A DNA stretch of 64,000 nt from Ophelia neglecta (Eukaryota), in NCBI GenBank assembly GCA_965285935.1, contig OZ260661.1, positions 94,922,001 through 94,986,000 on the forward strand, written 5' to 3'. The notes beneath the pieces were generated by a model. That model searched no databases. It was not told the DNA's origin and saw nothing but the letters and a program-made list of their open reading frames with translations. Each line of letters begins with the position of its first letter. The first letter of the stretch is position 1. Both the position numbers and the translations under genes were made by a program. Positions 44,301 to 63,735 of this stretch are shown here, piece by piece.

Positions 44301-46463
44301 CAAATAACATACAACCAAACACTAGGTTTGTAATACTGTATATGCTAAACATAATTTACATATATGATAGGCGCTAGCATTGATGGATCAAGACTGGATG
44401 TGCCAGTTTGCAGACATAAAAGTAACAGCTGATGAATTCAATCCACTTTACTGAGAAGAAAAAACATTCAAATTTGTTTCTATTGCGTGCATCAGACACA
44501 AAACCTGAATAGACCATGTGGTGCAAGAGCTCGGTTAATTGAGCAAGCACACAAAAACACACGTCACAGATTTAACAACACTTGCAGTGCCAAAGACCTA
44601 TAAAAGCAGATCTGGGGTTTGATGTTCATACTATATATGTGTTTATTCATTTTATATTACCAGACTGTTCAGCTAAAGGCTTGGAACTGGCAGTTCATGG
44701 GGCAGTAAAATTATTACTTGACTCAGTTGGTGATCTTAGTTTTACGTTGTATACAACACAAATTGCTCATACAGCAAACATAAATTTGTGTTTGTTGATA
44801 TTGGCGAAGGTTGCTTTCGGTTGCCATCTCTTGAAAATGGAATGGATAAACATCTGAAAGGGATCATTATTAACAGTTTTTTGGGGTTTTTTAATGCTTT
44901 ATGCGGGCCTCATATCAAGCCCAGCTGTCAACTCATGACACTTGATATTCAGAGTACAAGCCTCACGGTACACCCCACCCTGATTAAATTCTCTATGCTG
45001 GTTTCGATACTATAGGCCTATCACATGTGTGTCATTAAACACCCAAAATTAAAATCCTTCTATATATATTGTTTGAGAAATTTTCACAAGGGGTTTACAC
45101 CAGAGATTGATAATAGTAATGACAGCTGTAGGCAGAGGTGACAACCTTTTGTAAGTGCTCTAGCTGTGACACATCTCACACATCTCTATTTGTTGAGCAG
45201 CCTATACCACAGGAGGTTACATCACACTGTTGAAGGGCAGACAAGTCTGTAGCCCTGGCTACTGTATGTAAACAGCTTTAATAATTGGGCAGACAGGAAG
45301 TGTTGGGGGATGTAACAGTTGACATGAATAATTATTGTTTGCTTTATGCATAAAGTATAAAGACATCTAGGAGATCTGGTGACATTTAATGTGGCTTATA
45401 ATGGTAAAGTCAAAACTACCTAATTTTCCTCTTTTAAGCATAAAACATTGCTGCTGGTCAAGAAGGGTGGTTGATGTCCACATACCAGAGGGGGGGGGGG
45501 AGTCAGGGTGTAAGGAAGCCTGTTAGTGGGGGGTGGGGTGGGGGTGGAGGGGTGAACACAAGGCCTACCCTGACATCATATTATCTAACCCTCTATTTAC
45601 CAGAGGGGGGCCCATTTGGTACCCCATAATCATATCTGCAGTGTGTTTATAAAAGAAACAATTTGTACACAAATGTCATGCATTTTTATTGAACATGTTT
45701 TTTTTTTAATAAGGACAGTGTACAGGAATTCCACTTGCCTTGTTCAGCCATTCAGCCCTCTCTACATCCGGGAAGTAAACCTGAAGATAATAAGTTTAAA
45801 GCATGCAAATCATCTAAAAACTTCAAATTATAATTTATTTTACTTAGAATGTCTAGTAGCAATAACAAATGCAACAGCAATAATAATTCATTGTTTAATG
45901 GTAGTCTGTTTAATAGAAATAGATTAAAGGACAATTAAGCAGCATTTGTCACAGTGTAAAAGCATATTATCTTAGCCAATAAAGTGTATATGTACAAGCT
46001 AGTACGTGATCAACATGAATCATGACCAGGGTAAGAAAAACATACCCCCCCCTGCAAATAGCAATATTTATTATTGAATAGTAATTAAAGAAAAAGGAAT
46101 ATGAATATCCAATTATTATTATGAATTAATAATTATACTTACCCAAGCAGGTAGTTCATCAACTCTAGCCAATATTGCTTCTTTTTCATTCCGAACTGCC
46201 TCCTTAGCATATGCAATTTTTGCATCTTTTATTTTGCGATATTCTTCATTTGTAACATGAAAGAACAATCCAACTATGACCCACACTGAACTGAATCCAA
46301 AATAGCCAATGATCCACACTAAAAGTAGTAGCCCAGCTGTTTGGAAATACTTTTTTAGCAGTGGCAGAAGCTGAACACCTTGATTCTGGGTTTCTCTGTG
46401 TTGGCTGGGGGCAACAACAAATGGACCTCTGGCTGTGGGTGATGGAGGAACCTCATCCTCCAT
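23321..46463 (-). CDS. ESYT2: Extended synaptotagmin (TM hairpin, SMP, three C2 domains), ESYT2-like; 19 core coding exons, about 804 aa
   Basis: Exons: 46463-46143, 45780-45739, 38937-38800, 37623-37547, 37256-37190, 37072-36983, 36884-36829, 36680-36560, 35856-35757, 35157-35004, 34538-34490, 34357-34268, 30916-30815, 26465-26304, 26140-25988, 25768-25413, 24664-24530, 23854-23699, 23366-23321 (TAA). Diagnostic peptides: ELPAW-VYFPDVERAEWLNK, QMWPYIG, PPRVGGVKVYTEN, GKSDPYVKV, DQDPGDDDELG, GRLQLTLRH, ADPYVRIYLLPE, TEWYDL. Confidence 0.93.
29315..29320 (-). CDS. Candidate 6-nt microexon of ESYT (CATCAG, His-Gln) within C2B
   Basis: GCTAAC branch point, TTTTCATACATTTCTATAG acceptor, 6 nt, then CAG|GTAAGT donor. 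Frame-preserving. Confidence 0.5.
30603..30773. mobile_element. TA-flanked MITE (Tc1/mariner-pogo type)
   Basis: TA|CAGTGGTCCCTGCAATATAGGGCC ... GGCCCTACATCGCAGGGACCACTG|TA, about 24-bp inverted termini. Internal AGGTGGCCCTTCATC occurs twice. Confidence 0.85.
32545..32592 (-). CDS. Candidate 48-nt cassette exon of ESYT (EERLRKARISTDFNIG) in the C2A-C2B linker
   Basis: TTCTGCATTCATTTGCTCCTCACTATAG|48 nt, stop-free|GTAAGT. It is phase 0-0 inside a phase-0 intron. Confidence 0.6.
40651..42970. mobile_element. 2.3-kb non-autonomous DNA transposon, Tc1/mariner superfamily with Tc2/pogo-like CCGTA termini
   Basis: Perfect 32-bp TIR CCGTATTTCCTCTTTTTTTACGTCGGCTAATT and a TA duplication (40649-50, 42971-72). 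Subterminal GTCGAAT(A/T)ATAAGAGGG-type repeats occur at both ends. The interior is CpG-rich with no transposase-length ORF. Confidence 0.9.
41402..41570 (+). repeat. Tandem duplication (about 80-bp unit, two copies) inside the Tc2-like element
   Basis: AAAGGTGCGAATACTC(G/A)CTTCTAAGAAAGCCTAGCC(G/A)CAGTTA..AATGTAA(C/T)CGTCTCTGCAGATCG is repeated. Confidence 0.85.
43462..43775. mobile_element. hAT-type MITE
   Basis: TIR TAGGGCTG(C/A)ATAC and an 8-bp target duplication TTTAGAAG / TTTAGGAG (7/8). GATAC/ATACC motifs repeat subterminally. Confidence 0.8.
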
Positions 46464-47493
46464 GTTAGCAAAAGTTTGGAAGCCAAGGTTCAACGAAATC
46501 AGGAATACCTCACACAGGTGCCTACGCCTCTCGACCCTTACCGCTATGCATATGTTTCAACCCTACACGCCTCAATGGAAATCCAGGTGCATAGCGATAG
46601 ACGATGTTCTGTTTGCTACCTATCAAAAAGCTTGTGTTGACGATTGTAGCTGTAGCCTTGTATCTTGTGTACATGTATTTATAAACCGATTGGACGAACC
46701 CAAACAGCAGAGGGGTCACAACAGAAACATCTCATTTGTAAACATCACTGAAATTGATCAATATAACAACACGTTAAATCCAAAATACACTTGCTATAAA
46801 AAATTTAACCTATATTAATATCTAGCTTTCGGCAAATTGTCGATAAACTATTACCCCACTGAACAAATATACCACACCTGCTAGTGCACCATTTACCGGT
46901 TTACCCTGTCATCCCTTAGCTCTCGCAATGGTTCAGCGCACCTGCGCATGTGGATATTAGATCTTTAAACTGATATTTTATCAGCATTTGTTCATATTTG
47001 AGGCTGACATAACTATCATTGCAATCTTTCATGCACAGTTCATGTGCAGCTTTATAACCATGTTATTCCTAAGCGTACTGACTTGTTTTCATCTTTTCCA
47101 GCCGGTGAATATTTAAGGAGTTCACGAAGCATATTGAGTGTTCAGCTTTCACAAATAGGTCCATTTTAGGGGACAAATTTTACAAAAAGAAAATGGAAAT
47201 AACATGCTCTATATATTTAAATGTTATATTGTTTTGAACAATGGAAATATGTTTTATACATGTATGATCACCAAACCAAGACACGTTTGTAATTATGCAG
47301 ACTGAAAAATTCCTTAGGTGAATGAGAATGTTGTTTTCAGTGGTAAACTATTGCGCATGCTCATTGGGTCACATACCTGAATGGTGGATTTCTGCAACTG
47401 AGCTTAGAAAGTAAACCATTTTAGCAACATTTATGCAATTAAAACTTCTCCTAATGCAGCTTTGCCTTAGGTGACGATTTTTCTAAAAGCATA
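46464..47493. promoter_or_regulatory. Probable bidirectional promoter between ESYT and WDR60, with NRF1-like motifs
   Basis: Divergent ATGs at 46463 and 47494. TGCGCATGCTCA at 47352-47363 is 11/12 to TGCGCATGCGCA, and GCGCACCTGCGCATG lies at 46936-46950. Confidence 0.6.
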
Positions 47494-50400
47494 ATGCCAT
47501 CAGGAAAGGTAAGATATATTATTATCCGTAGCGAGATCATATATCGAGACTGACAAGTGTACTTTAATCGCGTTGCCACTGTAAACATGCTATCTGACAA
47601 TGTACCTCTTACTTGGTGTTAGCTACTCGGTAATGGGAAAGGCACTGGCAGAAAGTCTGAATCTCATAGAGGGGGATTTTCCGTGTATATGAGGTAAAAT
47701 TGAAGTTTTGCTTTGATAGCACACGCGAATAACCTCGATCCCCACTGCAATGTATACTTAAGTGAAAAATACAGCCACATTGGGTAGAAAATGCCCCCCC
47801 CCCCTAAAAAAAACAAAAACAACAACATTAGGCTTGAGTTAAAAATACAATTTAGGCTCTCGTCGGAACGTTCCTCTATAGGTGATTCGGGTGGATGGTT
47901 TTAATATTAGTTTGGCTTTGTTTTTAATTCAAGAAAAATATTTTTTTACATAAAAAAGGGAGACATTTCGTTTTTCATGTAATTCAGAACATTCCATTAA
48001 AACTCATAGACTGCATTGACAGTTGTAACATTAACCTGCTGCAAGGTCCAGTGGAAGTAGCCATCATGCTTATTAACAACTCATAGTTTCAGTGGTGATC
48101 ATTGAATTTTGGTGGCGACCACTCACCAGTTTCAAACCAGTCGGTGCCAAACTACTATTTGGATCTCACCATTTGAGCATGTGCATTCAGTATGACAAAA
48201 TGGCTTCCTGCATGGCTTGGGATACAATATTCTCTCCTGAAGATGAAACTGATATTGCCGCTGTTAACCCCATTGACTTGATTTGTATTTTTTACTGTAT
48301 GTATCACATTTTGGAGAGTTCTAATCAGAGATCCTAGTTGCAAAAAGTATTAACTTAGAGAATGTACTCCTATAAAAGAGACAATTTGGCAGCTATGATT
48401 TTAGGCATAGAGCCACCTTAGAGAACTATGTGGTTCTCAACAATTATCACTCTTTCTCAGCCATTTTAATTGGTAGCAGGATTAACCACTGAATAAACAA
48501 GGGCAAGTGGACTTGTTAAGTTGTCTGACTGATTGGCAATGTGTGCTTGTAATGGAGGGGCACTAATGGCTCTCATTACTGTTTATACAAAAACTAATTA
48601 GTAATCATTGGCTAGTCAACTGGTGATTTACCTTATTGTGAAAATCCTAATAGTCATAAAGAGTGAATATATTGTACAAATCAAAATGAATATGTTATAG
48701 ATGTACATGAGTGGGTGTTAATGTAATAATTCTGAACTTAAAACTGTTGCCGTGGTTTCTGCTTTCTGTAAAATTCATTCACAGTTAGTTTCAGTCCAGT
48801 AAAGCGACTCATATCAATCCACCTTGGTGAAGTGAACACCTCTATTAACTGAACACTTGCTGGTCCCAAGAGTGTTCCGTTAACCAAAGTTTTACAGTAC
48901 ATGAAATTTATAAAGTGAACCAGCATCGTGAGGCACCACTGTTAAGATCATTAAGAACTAATGGTCGTTATACCTCGTACAAAGACCTATTTAGAAACAT
49001 GATTAGAGAGGTAACTATGGTTAGAAGGTTCAGTGTTATGGACAATTGAGAAAAGTTTGATGAGTCTAGACACTGAGAGGCAGTAAATGGAACCAATCCT
49101 ATTCCCTTGCTACATGTAAGTAGTAAGTGTGAATGCTGGAATAATGTCCAATTTCATGTTCATTTTACTGAAATAGGAACATAATTCGCTCAGGAAAAAT
49201 CAAAACTAATAATTGAATTATATTTCCCTGTAGGCCTATTCCTAGATGCACAAATAAATAAAATTCAACTGGACCTACATCTCAGGGTCAAGTCATGTTA
49301 ATGCTTACTAATATTCCTGGCTCTGTTTATGAATCTGAACTAATGAATCTGAAGTAAACTATGTATTGACCAGAACAGATACATATACATAAATTTTGAC
49401 ATTTTCACATATATGATAGATTTTTTTTCATTTTCTAACAGTCAGACAGACATATCACCCATCTTTTGTTTTTGATGGAGGCATGCATTTCAAAATTCAT
49501 TGTTTTATTATTATTCATTTCAGTACAAAATCGAGTATTTCATAATTCCATAAGTTTTCTTCTCAAATATTCCGTACCTTCAGAGCAAAGAAGATACGTG
49601 GAAATCTGGTGATTTGGAGAAACAGATTAGGGTAAGATTAGCTTGCCCCTTCAGACTTTGTCTCAAAGTTAATTTAAGGCTTTAATTGTTGTCTTTGTTT
49701 CTATGATACTGTTGTTTTATCTCATCAGGATCTCAAAGTATGGCTCCCTGCAATAATGAAATTTATTCTGTTCATCTTTTTGATGAACAAAATGAAAACA
49801 GCTGTACAGGTTGTTTCATTGCCCGTACACTCGTGTGTCATTTTAGCCCAAGAATTAAAAGCAATATTGCAAAGTTTGTTGATTTGATTGTATTATCATA
49901 ATACAATAATTAATAAAAGGTTAAAATAATAACTGTTTAAATTTAAAGCATGGTAGAGTGCCAACAGAGGGAGTAAGGCATTGATAAAAAAATGTTGAAA
50001 ACTTGAATTTTAACATATTGGGACTGTGTTAAAATGTTCAACACCAACATAGAGTAAGAAACATAATGCATTAACACAATCAATTTGGTACATGCATTGA
50101 GTGTTAAGGCTTGTACCTGCATGAAATGTATACAAGTGTTCTTTTTTGAGATTAAAAGAAGCCAATACAGGGTTTTAAAACTCCTGTTGGACCTGGTGAA
50201 AGGGAAACACCAATATTAATTGCCCCAATTCATCTAGAAGTTTAGGGGATTCTTTTGAGCCTTATCTTTTGCCGTCTGCACCACCCATGCATGCAACCAA
50301 AAAATAGGTGTACCAGGGTAAGTGTAACTAAGCAATGCTTTTGCCTACGAAACAACAAAATATGTTGAGGCCTGGAAACTTTGCTAGAAGTAGTTTTTGG

Positions 50401-53400
50401 ACCCTGCTTCCTACACTTCTTAAATTTGAGGATAAAGCATGTGTACACACTTACGCAAAATACAAGCATTTCTTTTATTTAGAGGGATAAATCTGTTGAC
50501 CCCCTCCCTGCCCTGAATTTTATGTGTGTTCAGGCAACAAGTACCCAAGGGGCTTGTCCACTACTACCTACTATAGCTGAAGGTATTCATCTCCTCGGTG
50601 AACACAGGGTTAATGTCGCACCCATACACTGTAGCTTGTTGGGACCCAAATTAGGCCACTGATATCTTAATTTAGCCATGTTTCTTGGCTGCCTTAACAA
50701 CGTTTCCCAGTAAATACCTAACAATTGCAATTATTTTGACTCCAGAATCAGTTTTTATAATGTGTAATATTCAAATAGGAATGGACATTAAATTCTCCAT
50801 TTTTTCTTATTCAACAGATACCCTTTGACTTCTATTTAGGTCAAAAATAGGACATTTAATTCAGAATTTTGGGTGTTTCACTCAAGACCCCTCCTATCCC
50901 CCCACCCCTCCCTCAAATTCAGATTTATTTCTGAACCCATGTCCCAAGATTCTGCATTCTTTTTGCACACCCCTCTCCCTGAATTATAAATGGGTTACCC
51001 TGGGTTAAATGGAACAGCCCCAACCATTTTTTCTAAGTAAAATAATAGAAACCTGATTTTTTTCTTGTTCTTTGCATTTTAAGAGATTTGGAGTGTATTT
51101 GCATAAAATGTTCTCTATAAATCTTCTAGAATGCTTGTAAACATGTAGATAAATAAGGTGTATCAAATGAAATTATTTCACCCCCACCCTTGTATGTCAT
51201 TAATCAGTTGCACAAACATATTTACCATAACTTTCAATAGGTGGTGGCATATGTAATGTAATGATAATAAAAAGTAAATAAATAAATAAATAGAACCAAA
51301 ACAAAAATTTTGATTTACTATAAATGTATTAATGTAACTTTTGAAAAATTACCATTTTTTTTTTACTGTTTCTGAAACTTCAACATGGGTGCAGTCATGT
51401 AAAGAAATACAATTGATGGTCTTTGAAACCTGTAACAAGATAGACAACTGATTGTATATAAACTTCATTTTTCCATTTAAGGATGCTAAAGATGACAGGC
51501 GCAAAACACGTGACAAGGACAAAGAAAGAGAACGTGACCCCAAGAGAAAAGACAGACATAAAGAGGATGTGATTGATGATAAGAAACATAGAAGTAAACA
51601 AAGAGATGGTAATTTAAACCATTTGACATTATTTTAAAGTCTAGTAGACTGTTACAGCTTGTCTTACTTTTAATGAAATGGAAGATGGTCATTATATGAT
51701 TATTGTACCATGAGTATTATATGGAAAAATGTAATTAATATACTGATAGATTGCTTCGGATATTGAATGCACAATTGTGACATTGAATGTAAACACTGCA
51801 AAGTTAGGTTCTCGCATTAAAATTAATCTTTCAGATGACCGACATAAAGATAAAGACCGGGACAGAGATCGTGATAGGAGACACCGTGAAAGAGAAAATG
51901 GAGAATCAGACAAAAGGGAAAGACACAAGGAGAAGGATAGAGACAGGGATCGGGATCGCGACAGAGATAAAGACAAACGTCGCTCCAAAGAGGATGTATG
52001 TAAAGCTCTATATTGGTGGCTCTTTGTGTATGTTTCATGTAATGAGTTGAGTGATACCATCTTGTTGAGAGAAAAAAAGAGAATTTTTTCCAGAGAGAAT
52101 ATAGGTTCCATTCTTAGGACTAAATTTATTATTTAATACAGAAGTTCAGGTTAGATTATCATTCATGCCTCTGTTTGATTCAGAGACATATTAGTGGTGA
52201 CTTGAAATAATTGTATCATGAATTTCCACTACCACTATCAATATGTTGTATGGGAAAATATAATTTCTATCTACTTGTCAGTCAGAATGAGATGAGAAAC
52301 TGAAATTTTCAACCGGTCAAATTTATCTACTATAATAATTAGTTGTCTTATATTTGAATTTGAATTAAATTTGGTGGAGATAATACCTTTCTTCGCAAAT
52401 TTTACAATTAGAAAAGACTGACATATTCAGATTTCAGTTGTTATATTTATGACACTTATGTTATACATTGCTATGTGTTTAGTTGTTGGGAGAATATATT
52501 GATTTTTTTTCTTATGTCTTTTAGGATAGGAGAAAAGATGACAAAGAAAGAAGAAAGAAAAGAGATGAGGTAGGTTAAATGAAGAAGCTAGCAAGCAATT
52601 ATATTTTAGAGTGTACACCTTATTTATGCACTGTGAAATTCTTTAGAATGTTATGTATGAATACTATATCTATAGTTATGCTATATCTGTCTTTCATTTG
52701 CTTAGTTCTTTGGTTTTGATTCTTAGTAAACACACATGTGACACATACTTGTTTGCAGGACCCAGATGATAGAGAAAAGAGACATAGAAGACAAAAAGAG
52801 GTACATGTAGTTAGTATATAAAACCGCATATTCTCATTATATACATAAACCTGTCCTAATACACAATATTTCATTTTTTAGTGCACATTTGTCTTACGTG
52901 TGTAATATTAGAATTATGTAAGTCAAGTCACATTGCCTGAGCATGTATTCTGATAGGAAAATGATGAAGACAGAGAAAGGCGACATCGGCGACACAGAGA
53001 GGAACAAGTAAGTACCCTTCTGCATGTGATTATTTTGTGTTTCTTTTTTTATCCTTCTGCTATCAATTTTTAAATATTTGAGATTATTCCAGGCCCTGGG
53101 AAGTTGTGAAATGTTTGTAGTAGTAAATACCTGCTAAATGTACTACTTCAGTTTAAAATAGCAGACGTTAAACGTTCAACAGGTGCCAAAATGTCTAAAT
53201 ACTGATAATCCATGATTGCAAATACAGCATGCCCATTAAGTTCAGCTGTCGCTGTTTATTTATGAATACTTCCTCCACCCTATTAATAATAGAGAATAAT
53301 CAAACGTGATTTTGATTAATCTTGTAATGTTTTATTTTGGCATACTTGTCCCTTCGTTGATCATGGTGCTAATAGACTGCTTTACCAAAAACAAATTCTG

Positions 53401-56400
53401 AACAGGCATGTTGAAGAGATATACCTAAGCTGCCAAACAATAGCATTTAATTATACAAGTTCAAACATACTGTTATACTAAAGTACAGTGAAACCTGTGA
53501 ATTAAGACCACCAAAGGGACTGGAAATACTGATCTGATTTTGGAGGTGGTCTGTTTAGGTTATTAAACGTTGGAAACATGCAAGATGGTCCTCATATCAG
53601 TGATCTATATTGGCAGGTGGTCTGATTATAGAGGTGGTCTTTAAGGCAGGTTTCACTGTATTCAGTACAGAAGTTTTTATTTGATTGTTGTTTAAATGTA
53701 AAAGTAGTCATGACATCCACCTCATTTCCAGGACCGTGACGACAGAGAGAGGAGGCATAGAAAACAAAAAGAAACTGTTAGTGTTTTGTTCTGTTTTGTA
53801 TGTCGTGGCCATTATTAAGAGGAGGGGGGCTAATAGCTGAAAAGTGGGGTAGTGTGCTTTAAAGAAACCCTTTAGGCATGCTTTTTCGTTTTCAATTTTA
53901 CTAGTATCTCTTCACCTTGATTGGGAAATACTTACTATATACTGTTCTATATTCATTGATATTTCTTAAATTTTTACACTGGAATATCTTATACCCCAGT
54001 TTTTTTATAAGTACAATGATAGTGGCTTACTGTGCCAAAAAAGCTTACTTTTAATAGCTTAAATCCTTAAAAAAAATAGATCTACACTAAAAAATTGTTC
54101 GAGTACTTGATGCTAACCATATTTTGCACATTCTAGATGATTATATACCGTAAAAGAAGGCTTTTTAAATTTGCATTTTTCTTGCAGAATGGAGATGATC
54201 GAGAAAAGTCATCAAGAAGACACAGAGATGAAGATGTGAGTATCAGTGTTTTCTTTTTACAGTTATGTAATGGAGTTACCATGGATTTAGGAATGCACTG
54301 GTATATGTCTCTTTGGTGGCTTTGCAACCTTTATAATTGGTTGTTGGTGAACCTAGCCCTGGTCCATAAGGAATTCTGTTTGTAAGTTCAGACATATTTA
54401 ACTCAGGTTTAATTGCTTTCAGAGTGAAGATAGAGAGAGAAGACATCATGGGCACAGGGATGAGGATGGTGTTAGTTTCAATATTTGAATATTCTCATAC
54501 AACCTTATAATAACTTTATTGGAGCTTACTTGTACTTGTTAATTGTTGTTTAGATCAGCAGAAGCCAAGACTCCATTGTAGACATCAAACTACTTGTACA
54601 AAATACTATTTCAATATTTCTGAATCTCTGAATATTATTCTTACCCATTCTTGTTTTCTTTGTTGCAAACCCCTGAGTAAATTTCTGCTTCCTCTTTGTA
54701 TGGCTGTGTTATTTTTTTCTTCAGGACAGAGACAAAGAACAAAAACATAGAAAACACAGAGATGTTAGTCTGGTTTTTATTTCATTTTCATTACTTGTTT
54801 TTTTTTTGTCTCAGCACTTAACACCTAATGTAAAAAGTTGATAAGATTAAATGATCTTTATTCCAGTTGGGATATTTCTTGGGCTGGATACTTATAAGGT
54901 TATCTATTTATCATATAATTTTCCATTTTCCTCTCCATAAAGGGTGAAGATAGAGAAGACTGGCACATGAAACCAATAGATGATGTTAGTATGAGATTTT
55001 GTGCTTGACAGATTTGCCCCATTTGTTGTACTAATGACAAACTTTTTCCACTAACATAGGATTTCTATCCTCCACAGGAGGTGAGATTTTGATGTGAAGG
55101 CATGGGCTTCAGTTGCTTTGGTTTAAGAATATGAATATGAATACAAAGCCTGCAAGGGTATAGGCATTAAGAACAAATAATCATGAAACATGCCTAAATG
55201 TGTAAAAATGTCTTGCCAACAGAAGACGACCGTTCAGTGCATTGGGCATGTTCAGATTTTGTTAGCCTTGAATCCTAGTCTAATTCCAAAATGCCACAAA
55301 TCAAGAAACTGCCTTAATGGTTTTTTCATTTATTATCATGAGAGAAAGGTCTATTTTATTTGTATGAGAGACCATATTTCCAGACGAAGCTTGTGTTCAG
55401 GATTTGGCATTTTCCAGTTTTTTTGATCATAAAAACTGATTTTTAATTGTGTGCATATTAGAACCAATTGACTTCCTAGCAGTATAGACTGGATTGACAA
55501 TAAGACAAAACAAAGGGTTGTGTGTATTGTTTACACTTGGTGACCAGCATTTCTAAAGAATAGGCACTAGAATATCTCAAGCAATAATAAAAAACTAAGA
55601 AACTAACTAACCCCTAACAATTTGATAATTTATTGTTAAGTAACCATGTCCCAGCAAGGGTGACTTGACAGGAATATTGTCAAGAAATAAATTCAACTAC
55701 AGTTTTAAATTTGATGAGAAAAACCTTTCAAACAATCACTATGATAATATTACCAGCAATAGACTTACAATTTTGATGTGTTGGATAGTTGATTAATTTG
55801 TTTTTCTCGTGTCTGAGCTAATATTGTTTTCATACATGTTTGGTCAACTTCCCTAACTCTGCATTTTTTCATTTAGTGTATTTTAATCTGTCATTTATGA
55901 TCCCCAAATACTGGAAAAAAAGCCAGTACGAAATGGGATCATCATAACATTGTCCAATTTATTAATTTCTGTATGTTTTTTTCTCTGTCTGTGTAGAGGT
56001 ACTTTTTCCGGTTTTGAAGCCTTTCTTCATGTTTGTCTATCACTAATTCATTGAAAGTCTGTAGCTCTTGAATGTGTAAATTTGTATTTCAGAACTCTTA
56101 CTATAAAGACATGTTTAGTCCCAGTGGTGGAAATACTGTAAGTTCATCAACTGCTTAGCTTAGCCTCTTCATTAGCTGTCATTTTGATCAAAATGTTTTT
56201 TGCCAATTTTTTTAGCTAGGTTTCTGTGACCATGTGTTGTGATTATATGATCACACGTCTTGGACAGCTCTACTCCCACTATAACCAGTTCCCTGACTAT
56301 TACTTGTATATACTTCAGTGTAAAATAAGTAGAATAGATACCCTGGTAACTAAGCTTTTTATAGAAAATGAAGCTAACAAGTTGATGTGGGCATTTAGTA

Positions 56401-59400
56401 TTGCCTCAAGATGTGTAATCTCCTTTTGTGATGATGCTTGGTGGTTCTTAAATTCAGTATGCACAATTTCTCATTTTCGTCTGTTAGAATTACCTATCGC
56501 CCAGCAGACAAACACGATTTCAATTTGCAGTAGATGCTAGTCATTTGTAGATATCAAGGTATTTGATTGTAATATGAAAAACTTATAAAATTTCTTTGCA
56601 TTTGCACACTTCCTTTAATTAGGCAACAGTTTTACAGTTCCTTGGTTTTTTTTTTTTCAGCTGAAAACAAATAGTTATTGTTATGGTGATTCAGTTAAAG
56701 AAAAAACCCTTGCCAAACATTTAATTTCACACAATTTACTTTAAACAGTAAATCCATGCCACCCTAAATAGGATCTCCATGTTTATAGAGAAGTACATAG
56801 CTACAGTTATGAGAGATTTTAGCCATGAAGAGAGCAGATGGTAGAAAGGCCTATAGCAAAAACTGCAAGCCAAAATATGGTTTGGGCCGACCATTAAACC
56901 ATAAACTGAATTGAGAAAAGCCGAATGTTTTTAGGGTCTGGTCATTCCACCCCATACTGGTTGGTTTGTGAACCAAGGTATCAAAAATATAGTTTCTAGT
57001 TGTATAATCCTTCAAATTCAGATAGTCATCTTTTTTATATAAAGCAATAATGCATGAACTTTACTGCCTTGTTTCTTTTAATATTGAAAAATGGTGTCAT
57101 TTTTTGTAGGGGGAAGAAAAAGAAAAGAAGCACAGGCGTACTAGAGATGAAGATGTTAGTATCTGCTTCACACAATATATAGTTTGCTGGTTGTGCTTTA
57201 AAATTAACTGCCCTTTTTATTTACTGATGTCATCTGTTGCACTCTTGCATGAATGAGGCATATGGCCATCATATAATGTAATACAATAATATTGTACGAT
57301 AGTGTATAGGTATTTGGAATAATTGAATGGGTTAACTTAACCCATCAATGCCCAATTCAGTATTAACGTCAAAGCAAGAAGGCGGGATGTTTATTCCGAT
57401 GGGGAAGACAGATGCCGTAGACACAGGGATAGATCTCAGGATGAAAATGTTTGTCTTGATATTAATATTAATTGTATAAAATTGCTTTATTAGTGTACTA
57501 ACAAATAACTCTTTCTCTGCAGCATAAATGTATACTGATTAAACTGATGGCTCACGATATGAACTAAATTACGTTAATTGTATTGCAACATTAACATTTA
57601 TGTGATTTATATTTTAGAAATCCCTGTTATCAATGCACCATAATCTCTGCATGTTAACACCAGCAGTTTAAATGGTTATTTTGTTGTTTGCAGGGATCCC
57701 CTTGATATAACTATTTTAATATTACCATTTTGTTATGTTTAGTTTATTTAGTGTATATATTACATGGACTTTAATACATGTATATACTGGAAGAGTAGAC
57801 AGTTTGGTGTGGATTTTAAATTTGTCTACTCTCTAGTGCAAATTTGTGCAGAAATAAATTCTTGCCGAATCAAAACCACTTTTAGCATCTCCCTGTTCAA
57901 TTCCATGGTGCAAAACTTAGTTCCCTACAAGAATACTTCATATTAAAATTATATGGATACAAATTTTTGTCCTGACAATTGTTCTACTCTTGCAGCATTT
58001 GGTTGATGCTATCCTATTTTTGTGAATCGTTTGACCCGTCTGAGTACTGGTTGATTTTACCATTTAGCTAACACTTCTGTGTGTCCCATTAACAGATTTG
58101 ATTTTTCAGTTTTTGGGAAAATGCTAATGATCTGTGGCCATCAATAGCTAAATTCTTCCTAATAACCCAAACCTTCATGCCAAACAAACCAATATTTTTC
58201 AGCTATTTTAGCAAAAAACAAATGTGGTATTTGGATCCACACTGTCCCTGAGAAGTATGTTCCTATTATAAAATGTCCTTTTAGTGATTGTTAAATAATC
58301 AAGTGATAAGAATGCACTGTACTGTGGTTATTAACTAATTTTTAGTCTTATAAAAGGCACATACATGTATTCAATAAAATGGCTCGGGAAGCTGTATGAA
58401 TGTTTGCAGTTACATTATTCTTGGGTTTTGCCTAAAAGAACTATATAAAAAAGCCATTAAATTAAACAGGCCACAGTTATTTTTCCTGCTACTGCAAATT
58501 GGATGCCTCTATGCCCAATTTCTGTTATTGATTTCATATAAAGGAGAAAAAGACTTAATCTGAAATTAACAAAAGGCCAAGAAAGTTGACTACTCTTCTG
58601 CCCTTTATTTTTCAGCTTTTGAGAAAACATCATTGCAGTAACAGGCTGTCACCAGTCATTAAAGTTTCACACATATATTCTCAGGGTGACCGAAAGAAAA
58701 AGGATGATAAGATGCGAAGAGGCGATGAAGACGACCGAAAACGAAGGCACCGTGAAGATGACGAGAAAAGGAAACGCAGAGACGATGACGACAAAAAGCA
58801 TGGACGTCATCGTGATGGTGATGAGGAAAGGAAACATAAAAAACGAGAGGATGAGGTAGTAATTATGAGAAATTATGATTGAAATTAAAAAGTAATAGAT
58901 ATGATGAATATAATGCTCTTTTGTTGAAGTTTCATAAAAATTCGATTTTTTATCGAATGACATCACAGTTTATAGAAGCCTGTTGATTTGGCGGCCTTAG
59001 AAACCAAGGGGAAGCACAATTTTATGCCTTAGCCAAGGACCTGGTCAAATTCCATCCATATGACATGATTGACTTCAGGCAAAAACAACCATTCAAGTGT
59101 GGTACTTTATATTATGTTCAGATTCCTGCAAACATTCACTATTCATAAGAGCTGTTAGGTGGCTAGTGAGGTTGAGAAAATCGAACTAAATCACATTCGG
59201 TCAATAATTTCAAGGGCAAGTGGATATTTTGGCCCCTGGTGCACTGCTGTGTGTGGAGATCGTCTCCACCTCATCATGCTCTTGGCATTATGTATAAAAT
59301 AATTTCCCGGGTTGGGGCAGGATGTAATAATGGTTATTTCTACCATACAATAATTTAAGCATTAGCTGTCTTTTGTGGCTATAACACAGAACTTGACTGT

Positions 59401-60193
59401 AGGACCCTAGCTGGCTAATGGAAGTGAGGTGGATTTGCAGTCATTGATGGTTCAAAGTTCAAAGGTACTGAAACCTGCTGATTGATTAGCACATCTGAGC
59501 AGACAGCATGAACTATGCCAGAAATCCAGCCAACATCCTGCTGTGTACACATACTCATTAAAAACTTGATAGTCTGTAATTGGTCAACTCATAGAACCAT
59601 ATAAAAATTAAACATCCTGGTATAATGGTTCCTGGCATTATACTAGCACTTTTTTTCCACCAGTAAGGACTGAAATAATGGTGAACAGAACAGAACAAAA
59701 GTTGTATACCAAATCATGTCGCAACACAGTTAGACCTACTACTAATATTTATAGTTGCTATTTTCAAACTTTTAAAATCTTGCTTAAACGAATTTCATAT
59801 ATATTTAGACTATGTGCTGTTAAAACAAATGTTTCCGTAGATGATAACATATTTAACTATTTCAAAGTTGTATTGAATACTTATACAGACTGATGAGGAG
59901 AGAAGGAAAAGAAAGGAAAAGGAAAGAGAAAAACGGAGGAAAGAAAAGGAAGAAGAAGAGAAAAGGTAAAGTCATTCCTGGGTTGTACTCTTGCCCCTGT
60001 TTCTTTTTATCTGTAGTTATTGTACCAATTATTGTAGTCATTACTTTATATGGCAAACTGTATGTAGTGAATAACTAAGTAAAATGTTATTGGCAGTTTT
60101 TATTCCTTCTTTCAAAAATAAAACCTCTTTTAATTTATCTGAGAGTTGTTATGTTCATTTTTTTGTACTTGTAGGAAAGAGGAAGAAGAAAAG
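47494..60193 (+). CDS. DYNC2I1: Dynein-2 intermediate chain 1 (WDR60/DYNC2I1), 5' exons only; the WD40 exons are not in this window
   Basis: Exon 47494-47508 (MPSGK) plus 49584-49631 (SKEDTWKSGDLEKQIR) match the recalled human N-terminus MEPGK..TKDDTWKADDLRKHL. R/K/D/E-rich exons follow at 51482-51608, 51835-51995, 52525-52569, 52759-52800, 52957-53007, 53732-53776, 54188-54235, 54423-54470, 54725-54763, 54943-54984, 57110-57154, 58685-58855, 59889-59965 and 60175-60193, all AG/GT-bounded and phase-compatible. Head-to-head position with ESYT supports the call. Confidence 0.82.
52525..57154 (+). repeat. Tandem array of nine homologous phase-0 microexons (39-51 nt) encoding a DRE(R/K)RHRxxR(D/E) repeat
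   Basis: Peptides: DRRKDDKERRKKRDE, DPDDREKRHRRQKE, ENDEDRERRHRRHREEQ, DRDDRERRHRKQKET, NGDDREKSSRRHRDED, SEDRERRHHGHRDEDG, DRDKEQKHRKHRD, GEDREDWHMKPIDD, GEEKEKKHRRTRDED. Five share the donor GTTAGT. Confidence 0.85.
53486..53658. mobile_element. TA-flanked MITE (Tc1/mariner-pogo type) within the WDR60 microexon array
   Basis: TA|CAGTGAAACCTG..TAAGACCACC ... GGTGGTCTTTAAGGCAGGTTTCACTG|TA, with internal AGGTGGTCT repeats. Confidence 0.85.
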
Positions 60194-61146: not shown

Positions 61147-61317
61147 TATATCTGTGGGGTTTTGTCTATCTCAAAAAAACCTTTGTTTATTTTTTGTCTC
61201 CACTATTGCACACTTTACTGTCTGCTTAATTCTATCTCTGGACTACATGTCAAATGCATGTTAAATCCATACACAATCTAAAAATTCTAATTTGATGATT
61301 TCTTGTAATACCAATAT

Positions 61318-63735
61318 GTGATCATGAAACCCAAGATGAAAAATCAGAGAAGAATAGGCCACCAAAAGACTACAGAGAGATATAAACAACTTAAAGGCCA
61401 AGATAATTTGAGAAACCAGCAAGAAAAAGTGGTTGACCCTATTCGCTCAAGTTCATCCCCTGCTAATTACGACTACTCTGATGACTTTGAATCTTATACC
61501 AGCTCAGACACCGCCATATGTAGAGCTTCTAGCTCCCATTCAGCAAGCTCAAAAGAAGGCACATCAGGTTATTATGCCGAGAAATCTGTAGCACAAGATG
61601 GACAGAAAATGGCTGTACCAGTAAAGGGTATATCACACCATGAATACCCTGTGTATACAGATGAAAAAGAATTGGATGGAGTGATGAATGATTTGAAAAC
61701 TGCTGAAGATGAACTGGGATTTACATGTAAAACGGATCCTGAAACAATGGTATCCCAACTAGAAAAGGTGCAGAATGACATGGATGCCATGTTTGGTTCC
61801 TATGATCCTATACTGGGGAAGGATGATTACCTTTCTATTGCTATCAGAGAAGTAGAAAAAGCTCAAAGTAAAGAAAACAATTCTGTTGAATTGAAAGAAA
61901 ATTCAGATGCAGTATTCAAACTGGAAGATGAAAACAATAGGACAATTACCACTGATCTGCCTAGTTATGTTTCGGATACTACTATTAAATGTAAGAGAGG
62001 CCCTTTAGAAATTAACCCAAAGAATGACACAACAGATCAGGAACCAGAACTATCAGCTCCTTCAGCCATAGATAATGCAGCAGGCAGTGTTGTGCTAGAC
62101 GTTCTCAGAGCTTCTTTGCAAAAAGTTCAGGGATTTGAACAAAGACTGTGTAGTGGCATATTCAGGAAAATTCCTGCAGTCAAGTCAGTATTCAAACGAC
62201 TGGAGCCTCAAACCAACAGTTCTGAGTCTTCAGTTTCTATTGATTTAGAAAAACCAAATGGTTTAACACCAGAACCATGTGTTGTTTGGGAACCCAGCCA
62301 AGGAGATGCTGAGGAAATCCTCGCAGATTTTGATTCGGTTAAGTACCCAGAGAAAAAGGACAGCACAACAGAACAACTCAAAGAGGAAGAAATACAGCAA
62401 TGTTTGGTAAAAGGAAGGAAGACTGGATTATGGCTTCAGCAGGAAGTGTCACCACCTATTAGCGATTTTATTCAACTTTCAGACAGCAAAGTAGGAAATG
62501 AAACAGCACCTGTGGAAAGGACTCCAGAACCTACTCCAGTGGTCCCTTTCTTGTCTTCTCCTCAGCAAACAGCCACCCATGAGGATCAGTCTGATAACAT
62601 ACTGTCCAATCCCTCTAATTCTGTTAATAAGGGAACAACACCTACTCATGATAATAGCAAAGAAAATGAAAGATGCAATTCTGATCTGCAGATCAGTGCT
62701 GTGAAACTGGACAAGCCCCAAAATAACAGTAGAAAACTGGGCAGTCAGTTAGTTGAAAGCACTCATCCAGATGAGAGTTCAGACAAAACCGAAATCACTC
62801 TAGATTCAATAGCTGATCCTGATCAAAGCAAGAAAAACTCACTGCCATTGTTTGAAAAGAACAATATTGTCTCGCCAAGAAGCTTCAAATCGAGTTCTAG
62901 TGGAAATGCATCATCTTTAAAATTGCCAGAAAAGACACCACTGATTGCTACAGGCAAACCTGCTAGATCGCCAACCATATCTCCTGCCAACTCTCCTTCT
63001 CCAGCAAGATCGCCAGCTCCACCTAAAAGTCCTCGCAGAATATCACTTAACACTAGAACAGGATATAGCTCAAAGCCAAACCCTCTTAGTCCCAAGAAAA
63101 AAAATACTCCAAAGAATACTCTCAAAACTAGATCACCGAGACAAAAGACAATTCATGCAAAGATAACCTCCCCGAGCACCATATCAGCAGCTAACCCTTA
63201 TGAAACAAAAACCAAATCACCAAGACAAGAAAATAAAGTCAAGGAAAGTGCATTAGCAGCAAGCAGTACAAGAAATACAGGTGACAAAGTGAACTCCGTT
63301 TCTAATAGAAGTGATGTTTCTGAACCAATGAGAAAGTCTTTGGGAGAAAAGTCAATGAAATCTCCATTGGAGCTAACCCAACAAAATGCACAATCTCGCA
63401 CAGAGTGTAGTACTGAAACTTCAAAGACACAGTCATCTGTGGGCAAAAGTCTCGACATTTCAAATGTTGAACCTGCTGACAGCACAGAAGTATGTGTGAC
63501 AGGGAGCCAGCAAGTTGCTCACCTTGGAAATGTGGAAGATTCTACAAGTTTTGAACTAGAACCACAAAGTTCATCCCTTCATTCCTATCCTGATGATGAG
63601 GTATTTGAAATGAAGTTATCAACGTGTTGTGAAGATTTATGGTATTTCAAACACATAACCAGTTCTTTCATTTTGTCTCCCCAAACTGTAACACTATTAA
63701 CCAGACTCACTCAAGCCTTGGAAATTTGTTTTTAA
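61318..63735 (+). CDS. 2.4-kb open frame, Ser/Pro/Lys/Glu-rich low-complexity protein; probably a giant exon of WDR60, otherwise a nested gene
   Basis: An 805-codon stop-free frame in AT-rich DNA is very unlikely by chance. The track start is GTG and the first ATG is at 61324. Phase-0 AG acceptors precede 61336 and 61348, and a possible donor GAG|GTATTT lies at 63600/63601. It contains NYDYSDDFESY and many SP[RK] motifs, with no recognisable folded domain. Confidence 0.7.
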   Translation: MIMKPKMKNQRRIGHQKTTERYKQLKGQDNLRNQQEKVVDPIRSSSSPANYDYSDDFESYTSSDTAICRASSSHSASSKEGTSGYYAEKSVAQDGQKMAVPVKGISHHEYPVYTDEKELDGVMNDLKTAEDELGFTCKTDPETMVSQLEKVQNDMDAMFGSYDPILGKDDYLSIAIREVEKAQSKENNSVELKENSDAVFKLEDENNRTITTDLPSYVSDTTIKCKRGPLEINPKNDTTDQEPELSAPSAIDNAAGSVVLDVLRASLQKVQGFEQRLCSGIFRKIPAVKSVFKRLEPQTNSSESSVSIDLEKPNGLTPEPCVVWEPSQGDAEEILADFDSVKYPEKKDSTTEQLKEEEIQQCLVKGRKTGLWLQQEVSPPISDFIQLSDSKVGNETAPVERTPEPTPVVPFLSSPQQTATHEDQSDNILSNPSNSVNKGTTPTHDNSKENERCNSDLQISAVKLDKPQNNSRKLGSQLVESTHPDESSDKTEITLDSIADPDQSKKNSLPLFEKNNIVSPRSFKSSSSGNASSLKLPEKTPLIATGKPARSPTISPANSPSPARSPAPPKSPRRISLNTRTGYSSKPNPLSPKKKNTPKNTLKTRSPRQKTIHAKITSPSTISAANPYETKTKSPRQENKVKESALAASSTRNTGDKVNSVSNRSDVSEPMRKSLGEKSMKSPLELTQQNAQSRTECSTETSKTQSSVGKSLDISNVEPADSTEVCVTGSQQVAHLGNVEDSTSFELEPQSSSLHSYPDDEVFEMKLSTCCEDLWYFKHITSSFILSPQTVTLLTRLTQALEICF

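What the first reader, a model, noticed from the sequence alone, without database searches (positions are those of the whole stretch)
52525..57448. Modular microexon array encoding the charged disordered N-terminus of dynein-2 intermediate chain WDR60
Seen: nine AG/GT-bounded exons of 45, 42, 51, 45, 48, 48, 39, 42 and 45 nt, all multiples of three and phase 0-0. Each encodes one unit of a D/E-D-R-E-(R/K)-R-H-R-x-x-R-D-E repeat, and five share the donor GTTAGT, which points to serial exon duplication. The same unit recurs without introns in exon 58685-58855. Established: WDR60 has a long charged N-terminal region ahead of its WD40 domain. Inference: any subset of these exons can be skipped in frame (up to 2^9 combinations), so the array could tune the length and charge of this region of the retrograde IFT motor per ciliated cell type. 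I know of no description of such an array in WDR60. Short-exon arrays are easily missed by gene predictors.
Basis: partly seen in the sequence, partly recalled or inferred. Interest (0 to 1): 0.82.

Follow-up and report, generated by a model that had tools for sequence, protein, structure and literature searches.

The report
Short repeated exons in dynein-2 WDR60
Nine very short, similar, in-frame exons really do sit in the 5' part of this invertebrate's WDR60 (dynein-2 intermediate chain) gene and encode charged repeats of its flexible N-terminal tether, but related animals already have annotated, looser versions of this layout, and no RNA data could be reached to show how the exons are spliced here.

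Summary
Nine AG/GT-bounded, stop-free, phase 0-0 exons of 45, 42, 51, 45, 48, 48, 39, 42 and 45 nt lie at 52525-57154. Five have the donor GTTAGT. Shuffled sequence gives about 0.007 such charged segments against 8 observed.

The gene is the WDR60/DYNC2I1 orthologue. Downstream exons match human WDR60 in PDB 6rlb, and the gene sits head-to-head with an E-Syt gene, as in three other phyla.

The units look like old duplicates under protein-level constraint: pS is about 0.86, pN about 0.30, and the intron flanks cannot be aligned. With the nine exons the N-terminal extension is about 350 aa, within the 275-418 aa of orthologues. Without them it is about 215 aa.

The layout is not unique. Lineus, Haliotis, Saccostrea, Dimorphilus and Saccoglossus models have runs of short phase 0-0 exons in the same segment. 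RefSeq isoforms skip some of them, for example a 39-nt unit exon in Lineus.

I found no RNA run and no transcript-derived protein of this species. Inclusion, and above all combinatorial skipping, is therefore untested. This is an extreme, finely split member of a known kind. The scan has not reported it on other DNA.

The parts
47494..47508 (+). First coding exon of WDR60 (ATG; MPSGK), about 1 kb from the divergently transcribed E-Syt gene
   Evidence: The same 15-nt first coding exon (MPSEK/MPPGK/MPSGK) is present in all six mapped orthologue models.
49584..49631 (+). Exon 2, 48 nt, phase 0-0, SKEDTWKSGDLEKQIR (conserved KEDTW motif)
   Evidence: The orthologue exon 2 is 48-57 nt and carries the same motif.
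51482..51608 (+). Exon 3, 127 nt, phase 0 to 1, charged
   Evidence: A conserved phase-1 intron follows it in the five orthologues where it can be read; Dimorphilus lacks it.
51835..51995 (+). Exon 4, 161 nt, phase 1 to 0, RD/RE/RH-rich; ends in phase 0 just before the array
52525..52569 (+). E1, 45 nt, DRRKDDKERRKKRDE, donor GTAGGT
52759..52800 (+). E2, 42 nt, DPDDREKRHRRQKE, donor GTACAT. Alternative in-frame donors lie at 52806 and at 52809 (GTTAGT).
52957..53007 (+). E3, 51 nt, ENDEDRERRHRRHREEQ, donor GTAAGT
53732..53776 (+). E4, 45 nt, DRDDRERRHRKQKET, donor GTTAGT
   Evidence: Against E2, pS is 0.90 and pN 0.08.
54188..54235 (+). E5, 48 nt, NGDDREKSSRRHRDED, donor GTGAGT
   Evidence: Its 3' end plus donor is 95% identical to that of E9 over 21 nt (family D8).
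54423..54470 (+). E6, 48 nt, SEDRERRHHGHRDEDG, donor GTTAGT. It carries a heterozygous A>G at 54448 (His to Arg).
54725..54763 (+). E7, 39 nt, DRDKEQKHRKHRD, donor GTTAGT
54943..54984 (+). E8, 42 nt, GEDREDWHMKPIDD, donor GTTAGT. The basic core is degenerate and the acceptor (..ccataaag) is weak, so it may be a decaying exon.
   Evidence: clear nucleotide match to the unit profile, E 5e-7.
57110..57154 (+). E9, 45 nt, GEEKEKKHRRTRDED, donor GTTAGT
57401..57448 (+). Unit-like relic (GEDRCRRHRDRSQDEN, then GTTTGT) without any in-frame AG acceptor. Probably a dead tenth unit.
   Evidence: Read from the sequence and the open frame. Only a faint profile match.
58685..58855 (+). 171-nt phase 0-0 exon with about four fused units and no introns between them
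   Evidence: family D3, period 27-33 nt.
59889..59965 (+). 77-nt K/E/R-rich exon, phase 0 to 2
   Evidence: The same 0-to-2 then 2-to-0 exon pair precedes the DDFE exon in Haliotis and Saccoglossus.
60175..60193 (+). 19-nt exon, phase 2 to 0

Best explanation
The nine segments are genuine coding exons of the WDR60/DYNC2I1 orthologue, the dynein-2 intermediate chain, of an unidentified invertebrate. Its closest annotated WDR60 sequences, about 50% identical, are spiralian. Each exon encodes one 13-17-aa acidic-then-basic module, roughly D-D-R-E-R-R-H-R, of the long, charged, intrinsically disordered N-terminal extension. They lie upstream of the conserved DDFE patch.

The array arose by ancient tandem duplication of a symmetric (phase 0-0) unit exon. 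It has since been kept under protein-level constraint, with some birth and death: E8 is degenerate and a tenth unit is dead.

In human cells this extension acts as a flexible tether that docks dynein-2 on IFT-B trains. By inference, the modules here mainly supply length and mixed charge to that tether. Most are probably included in the main mRNA. The weak GTTAGT donors and the small exon size make occasional skipping of single exons plausible, as annotated in relatives, but this is not shown.
For: Shown:
- The exon features are far beyond chance.
- Gene identity. Downstream exons match human WDR60 residues 462-541 (E 4e-12) and 582-691 (E 9e-10) in PDB 6rlb/6sc2. The gene has the MPSGK / KEDTWK start and DDYNYDDDDFE / DYDDDFE exons just past the window. 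It is head-to-head with an SMP/C2 (E-Syt) gene, as in Liolophura, Lineus and Saccoglossus.
- Coding constraint among units. Mean pS is 0.86 against pN 0.30, and differences by codon position are 130/144/225. Similarity stops at the splice sites.
- The same unit is abundant in orthologous proteins.
- Orthologue models have phase 0-0 short exons in the same gene segment: Lineus 57, 57, 117, 81, 39, 108, 63 nt; Haliotis 54, 66, 240, 60, 42, 63; Saccostrea 45, 60 ... 45, 60, 84, 84, 30; Dimorphilus 87, 69, 132, 321, 63, 54; Saccoglossus 105, 105, 48.
- Length. With the nine exons the extension before the DDFE patch is about 350 aa. Orthologues have 275-418 aa. Without them it would be about 215 aa.

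From the literature:
- The WDR60 N-terminal extension is a transplantable flexible tether to IFT-B (PMC10987677).
- Human residues 1-374 are poorly conserved yet contribute to function (PMC10110421).
Against: There is no transcript evidence for this species. No RNA run was returned, the three runs laid are genomic DNA, and no matching transcript-derived protein was found. The reading frame does not need the exons, because both neighbours are in phase 0. Five donors have T at +3, which is weak. E8 has lost the basic core. The pN/pS comparison rests on short sequences aligned by hand and on pairs that are not independent. The tether function is carried over from human cell work and was not tested for this repeat region.
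Confidence: 0.75

Rival explanations
1. The array is a combinatorial splicing device: many subsets of the nine exons are included in different ciliated cell types, tuning the length and charge of the dynein-2 tether.
For: All nine exons, and both flanking exon ends, are in phase 0. Weak GTTAGT donors and microexon size are typical of regulated exons (my own knowledge). In relatives, RefSeq isoforms skip phase-0 cassette exons of the same extension. Lineus X3 lacks exactly the 39-nt unit exon. Magallana gigas isoforms lack 28 aa, 49 aa and/or 10 aa, which correspond to the 84-nt exon, the 60-nt plus 84-nt exons, and the 30-nt exon of the Saccostrea model. Ostrea, Mytilus, Argopecten, Dreissena, Haliotis and Owenia show similar cassettes.
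Against: There are no RNA data for this species. Each relative shows only one to three cassette events, mostly outside the core unit run, and these are computational isoform models. The total length with all nine exons matches orthologues, which suggests that inclusion is the default. Protein-level constraint on each unit fits constitutive use equally well.
Confidence: 0.12
2. Some or all of the segments are dead pseudo-exons, relics of past duplications that are no longer spliced into the mRNA.
For: The frame does not require them. A clearly dead tenth unit lies at 57401-57448. E8 is degenerate with a weak acceptor. Five of the donors are weak.
Against: All nine keep AG, a pyrimidine tract, GT and an open frame, although synonymous sites are saturated. 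Neutral relics that old should have lost these features, as the tenth unit has. Differences are enriched at the third codon position. Without the nine exons the extension would be shorter than in any orthologue examined.
Confidence: 0.08
3. A rival for the origin only. The array arose not by exon duplication but by repeated intron gain into an ancestral long exon made of tandem units. Such long exons exist in the chiton (828 nt) and the oyster (331 nt).
For: Liolophura and Saccostrea encode many units in one exon. This genome also keeps a four-unit exon without introns. The intron flanks show no similarity.
Against: The introns fall at the same point of the unit, in the same phase. Five or six share the unusual hexamer GTTAGT, and E5, E8 and E9 share up to 9 intron bases. 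This is more simply explained by copying an exon together with its donor. Adjacent near-identical exon pairs in Lineus (57/57 nt) and Saccoglossus (105/105 nt) show that exon duplication does occur in this gene segment. Intron loss can explain the long exons.
Confidence: 0.2

Closest known systems
WDR60/DYNC2I1 N-terminal extension (human; flexible tether to IFT-B, PMC10987677, PMC10110421)
   Same: It is the same gene (PDB matches). It has the same position ahead of the DDFE/IFT54-binding patch and the light-chain sites, and the same highly charged, disordered character.
   Different: The human studies describe the region as poorly conserved and do not discuss exon structure or repeats. Here it is built from regular D-D-R-E-R-R-H-R modules, one per exon. 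The fraction of D, E, R, K and H in the extension is 0.73-0.85 in the invertebrate orthologues examined, against 0.63-0.66 in vertebrates.
Annotated WDR60 gene models of other invertebrates (Lineus longissimus, Haliotis rubra, Saccostrea echinata, Dimorphilus gyrociliatus, Saccoglossus kowalevskii)
   Same: They have runs of phase 0-0 short exons, starting in the acidic spacer, in the same gene segment. There are tandem duplicate exon pairs, and cassette skipping appears in RefSeq isoforms.
   Different: Their exons are fewer and mostly hold two or more units (54-331 nt). The chiton has a single 828-nt exon. The window's gene is the most finely split, with nine consecutive single-unit exons of 39-51 nt.
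Titin PEVK exons and other symmetric exons that encode disordered modules (PEVK: my own knowledge; general principle: PMC3632108)
   Same: These are tandemly duplicated, in-frame short exons, each encoding one module of a disordered, charged segment. The number included sets the length of that segment.
   Different: Differential inclusion is experimentally established for PEVK and untested here. The protein, the unit sequence and the proposed role (motor-to-train tether rather than spring) all differ.
Neuronal/animal microexons (3-51 nt regulated cassette exons; my own knowledge)
   Same: The size class, the frame preservation and the location in a disordered, charged protein region are the same.
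   Different: Classical microexons are single, deeply conserved and regulated by SRRM4-type factors. Here they form a paralogous array, and no regulation has been shown.

Membership tests
WDR60 / DYNC2I1 orthologue | Region homologous to the light-chain (DYNLT) binding stretch and the following segment of human WDR60 | tested here: met
   L009:3141-3431 matches 6rlb_C residues 462-541 with E 3.9e-12.
WDR60 / DYNC2I1 orthologue | Start of the C-terminal beta-propeller region homologous to WDR60 | tested here: met
   L009:4618-4977 matches 6rlb_C residues 582-691 with E 9e-10. Further WD-like open frames follow in L009.
WDR60 / DYNC2I1 orthologue | Acidic DDFE double motif (IFT54-binding patch in human) ahead of the light-chain sites | tested here: met
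   The exons DDYNYDDDDFE and DYDDDFEDDD lie at about L009:35-92 and 563-653. The same exon pair occurs in the orthologue models.
WDR60 / DYNC2I1 orthologue | Array and propeller exons belong to one transcript | not testable with these tools
   No RNA for this species. This is inferred from strand, order, phase continuity and exon-by-exon correspondence with the orthologue models.
Tandemly duplicated exon array | Neighbouring exons similar in sequence, length class and phase | tested here: met
   66-84% nt identity between unit exons. All are 39-51 nt and phase 0-0.
Tandemly duplicated exon array | Similarity extends into the flanking introns (recent duplication) | tested here: not met
   Only the donor hexamer and up to 9 intron bases are shared. 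With pS near saturation, this points to old duplications, not to the absence of duplication.
Alternatively spliced cassette microexons | Length of 51 nt or less, frame-preserving, with canonical splice sites | tested here: met
Alternatively spliced cassette microexons | Transcripts both with and without the exon | not testable with these tools
   No RNA for this species. Only indirect support exists: RefSeq isoforms of relatives skip comparable exons.

The most novel reading that the evidence does not exclude
The nine single-unit exons are used combinatorially and tissue-specifically. Different ciliated cell types would then make dynein-2 with N-terminal tethers differing by up to 135 residues in 13-17-residue steps, setting how dynein-2 docks on anterograde IFT trains.
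Probability: 0.1. Interest if true: 0.6.

Novelty: new member of a known kind. Interest (0 to 1): 0.3.

Why it matters
The WDR60 N-terminal extension was recently shown to be the flexible tether that loads dynein-2 onto IFT trains. What sets its length and composition is unknown, and the field treats residues 1-374 as simply non-conserved.

This locus, together with the orthologue gene models mapped here, shows that in many invertebrates the region is built from a recognisable acidic-basic-His module encoded by symmetric exons. These exons are duplicated, fused, lost and, in some annotations, skipped. That gives a concrete handle for testing whether tether length matters: natural variants with different numbers of units.

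On its own, the array in this window is a well-preserved example of exon-duplication modularity, not a new mechanism.

Tried and rejected
RNA evidence:
- The look-up of sequencing runs with a 10-kb query returned only three genomic runs of one sample.
- Read laying confirmed the runs are DNA, with flat depth over introns and exons, so it gave no splice information.

Same-species proteins or transcripts:
- The word search with the 171-nt exon found nothing in the 59-187 aa range.
- The search with the 803-aa open frame found nothing.
- The library-wide HMMER search and the search with Lineus WDR60 found no protein more than about 50-65% identical to this gene. The species and its close kin are therefore not in the protein collections at the lengths searched.

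Other dead ends:
- Pfam gave nothing for the charged exons or the giant open frame.
- The look-up of encoding contigs failed for isoforms that are not the longest product.
- A nucleotide profile of the unit found no further hidden units in the introns.

Rejected: chance occurrence, and recent serial duplication.

All searches were exon by exon, by reference.
Full report
**What is in the sequence.**
Reading 51800-59200 and enumerating every AG...GT-bounded, stop-free segment whose length is a multiple of three gives nine exons on the + strand:

| Exon | Coordinates | Length (nt) |
|---|---|---|
| E1 | 52525-52569 | 45 |
| E2 | 52759-52800 | 42 |
| E3 | 52957-53007 | 51 |
| E4 | 53732-53776 | 45 |
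| E5 | 54188-54235 | 48 |
| E6 | 54423-54470 | 48 |
| E7 | 54725-54763 | 39 |
| E8 | 54943-54984 | 42 |
| E9 | 57110-57154 | 45 |

Its implied starts for E2-E9 were one base too high. Every acceptor has AG and a pyrimidine-rich tract. The donors are GTAGGT, GTACAT, GTAAGT, GTTAGT, GTGAGT and then GTTAGT four times, so five share GTTAGT as claimed. E2 has two more in-frame donors, one of them a sixth GTTAGT at 52809.

The translations are acidic-then-basic units such as DRDDRERRHRKQKET. E1 lacks the His core, and E8 (GEDREDWHMKPIDD) is degenerate. The end coordinate in the finding, 57448, belongs to a tenth unit-like stretch (57401-57448, GEDRCRRHRDRSQDEN followed by GTTTGT). This stretch has no in-frame AG acceptor and is best read as a dead unit.

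The 171-nt exon 58685-58855 carries about four units without introns (family D3).

**Is it more than chance?**
Yes. In 52.0-58.6 kb there are 8 distinct acceptors followed by a highly charged in-frame AG..GT segment. Three hundred shuffles gave a mean of 0.007 and a maximum of 1. The whole minus strand of the 64-kb window has none, and all + strand cases lie in this gene's 5' part.

**Which gene.**
The window is G000:C1:94922001-94986000. I fetched 60 kb downstream.
- Open frames in the first 10 kb match human WDR60 (cytoplasmic dynein 2 intermediate chain 1; PDB 6rlb, 6sc2, 8rgg, 8rgh) at residues 462-541 (E 3.9e-12) and 582-691 (E 9e-10), and match nothing else in the PDB.
- Just past the window lie the exons DDYNYDDDDFE and DYDDDFEDDD..., the acidic patch.
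- Upstream, the gene starts with a 15-nt coding exon (47494-47508, MPSGK) and a 48-nt exon (49584-49631, SKEDTWKSGDLEKQIR). Exons of 127 nt (phase 0 to 1) and 161 nt (phase 1 to 0) follow.
- After the array come the 171-nt exon, a 77-nt exon (0 to 2) and a 19-nt exon (2 to 0).
- The gene is head-to-head with a gene carrying an SMP lipid-binding domain. The called gene next to WDR60 has the same arrangement in the chiton Liolophura, the nemertean Lineus and the hemichordate Saccoglossus.

The identification as WDR60 is therefore sound.

**Are the nine segments coding exons?**
Direct proof is missing.
When laid on 51800-57799 they proved to be genomic DNA, with flat depth over introns and exons.
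- The long query probably hid exon-only RNA holders. That was my mistake and could not be repeated.
- Word searches with the 171-nt exon and with the 803-aa open frame found no same-species protein. The nearest WDR60 proteins in the collections are only about 50% identical over the conserved part.

Indirect evidence is nevertheless consistent.
1. All nine keep acceptor, tract, donor and open frame.
2. Among the seven alignable unit exons plus the relic, differences fall 130/144/225 on codon positions 1/2/3. Mean pS is 0.86 (saturated) against pN 0.30 when E8 and the relic are left out; E2 against E4 gives 0.90 against 0.08. Nucleotide similarity stops at the splice sites. So the copies are old and have been kept as protein. 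This analysis rests on short sequences aligned by hand and on pairs that are not independent.
3. The same unit is abundant in orthologous proteins.
4. With the nine exons, the extension ahead of the DDFE patch adds up to about 350 aa, within the 275-418 aa seen in 15 orthologues. Without them it would be about 215 aa, shorter than any. The sum was made by adding exon lengths.

**Comparison with other species.**
I mapped six annotated proteins onto their own genomic loci by exact-match chaining and splice-site refinement. All share the 15-nt first exon. All but Dimorphilus also share the phase-1 intron between the third and fourth coding exons. After that comes a run of phase 0-0 exons that begin in the acidic spacer:

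| Species | Phase 0-0 exon run (nt) |
|---|---|
| Lineus longissimus | 57, 57 (a near-identical pair), 117, 81, 39, 108, 63 |
| Haliotis rubra | 54, 66, 240, 60, 42, 63 |
| Saccostrea echinata | 45, 60, then 200 and 331 (not phase 0-0), then 45, 60, 84, 84, 30 |
| Dimorphilus gyrociliatus | 87, 69, 132, 321, 63, 54 |
| Saccoglossus kowalevskii | 105, 105 (a pair), 48 |
| Liolophura sinensis | 90, then one 828-nt exon holding most of the units |

Symmetric short exons that encode charged modules are therefore an old and widespread design of this gene segment. Lineages differ in duplication, fusion and internal expansion. The window's gene is the most finely divided example seen: nine consecutive single-unit exons.

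**Alternative splicing.**
Nothing can be said for this species. In relatives, RefSeq lists many isoforms.
- The four Lineus isoforms differ by exact exons. X3 lacks precisely the 39-nt unit exon AEERKHRKRDEKK, and X4 lacks an 84-nt exon.
- Magallana gigas isoforms lack 28 aa, 49 aa and/or 10 aa. On the Saccostrea model these correspond to the 84-nt exon, the 60-nt plus 84-nt exons, and the 30-nt exon.
- Ostrea, Mytilus, Argopecten, Dreissena, Haliotis and Owenia show similar single cassettes.

These are computational isoform models and mostly lie at the edge of the unit run. They make skipping of single exons plausible here, helped by the weak GTTAGT donors. They do not support a 2^9 repertoire.

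**Origin.**
Several features favour duplication of an exon together with its donor:
- shared phase and a shared position within the unit;
- the unusual donor hexamer in five or six exons;
- up to 9 shared intron bases in E5, E8 and E9 (family D8);
- exon pairs in other phyla.

The unalignable flanks and saturated pS say the duplications are ancient. Intron gain into a repetitive long exon remains a minority alternative. The dead tenth unit and the degenerate E8 indicate turnover. A nucleotide profile of the unit found no further copies hidden in the introns.

**Function.**
In human cells the WDR60 N-terminal extension (1-470) is required for dynein-2 function and can be transplanted onto WDR34. 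It is proposed to be a flexible tether to IFT-B through patches at 375-388 (IFT54) and 407-433 (IFT80) (PMC10987677). Residues 1-374 are poorly conserved, unstable and disordered, but deleting them gives moderate defects (PMC10110421).

The array lies in the equivalent of that non-conserved part. My reading, which is inference and not shown, is that the modules supply length and mixed charge to the tether.

**Novelty.**
No paper links WDR60 with microexons or exon duplication in the library searched. The general principle, that symmetric exons encode disordered modules, is established (PMC3632108; titin PEVK from my own knowledge). Database gene models of relatives already contain the architecture.

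I therefore class this as a new and extreme member of a known kind, of moderate to low interest until RNA data exist. The scan holds no earlier report of the same thing on other DNA.

Noticed in passing
window 61309-63732 (+): There is a 2.4-kb open frame (808 codons) between the charged exons and the DDFE exons of WDR60. It is in phase with a GT donor right after codon 764 (exon end 63600...YPDDE|gtattt) and holds an ANYDYSDDFESY motif that resembles the DDFE patch. It has no Pfam family and no relative of 442-1405 aa. It could be a giant in-frame cassette exon, an alternative end or a nested gene. An open frame this long in 35% G+C DNA is unlikely to be chance.
   Followed up: partly
window 53480-53660: A very high-copy short interspersed repeat with inverted ends (MITE- or SINE-like) lies in the intron between E3 and E4. 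Summed contig depth there is about 2-6 x 10^5, against 12-40 elsewhere, with many alternative joints.
   Followed up: no
window 59014-59250: An interspersed repeat lies in the intron after exon 58685-58855. It has about 40 matches of 68-86% identity on several chromosomes of the same genome.
   Followed up: no
window 46122-46556 (-) and 38542-38937 (-), against WDR60 start 47494 (+): The E-Syt-like gene (SMP_LBD) is transcribed divergently from WDR60, about 1 kb away. The same head-to-head pair is present in a chiton, a nemertean and a hemichordate, so this is very old microsynteny and possibly a shared bidirectional promoter.
   Followed up: partly
window 54448 and 52943: There are two polymorphisms in the sequenced sample. 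One is an A>G in E6 that changes His to Arg, seen in part of the contigs of all three runs. The other is a 5-nt insertion (TGACT) 14 nt upstream of the E3 acceptor in two runs. Only 1 of about 43 listed SNPs in 6 kb falls in the 405 nt of microexons.
   Followed up: no
window 15694-18126 (+): An intron-less 811-codon open frame encodes an ankyrin-repeat protein (Ank_2, E 8e-30). It lies between a minus-strand gene with CTLH-like and WD40 exons (3.4-15 kb) and the E-Syt gene.
   Followed up: no
L018 2580-2901 (Lineus) and L019 8164-9353 (Saccoglossus): Both loci hold near-identical adjacent exon pairs (57/57 nt and 105/105 nt) in the charged region of WDR60. These are independent, more recent tandem exon duplications in other phyla.
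   Followed up: partly
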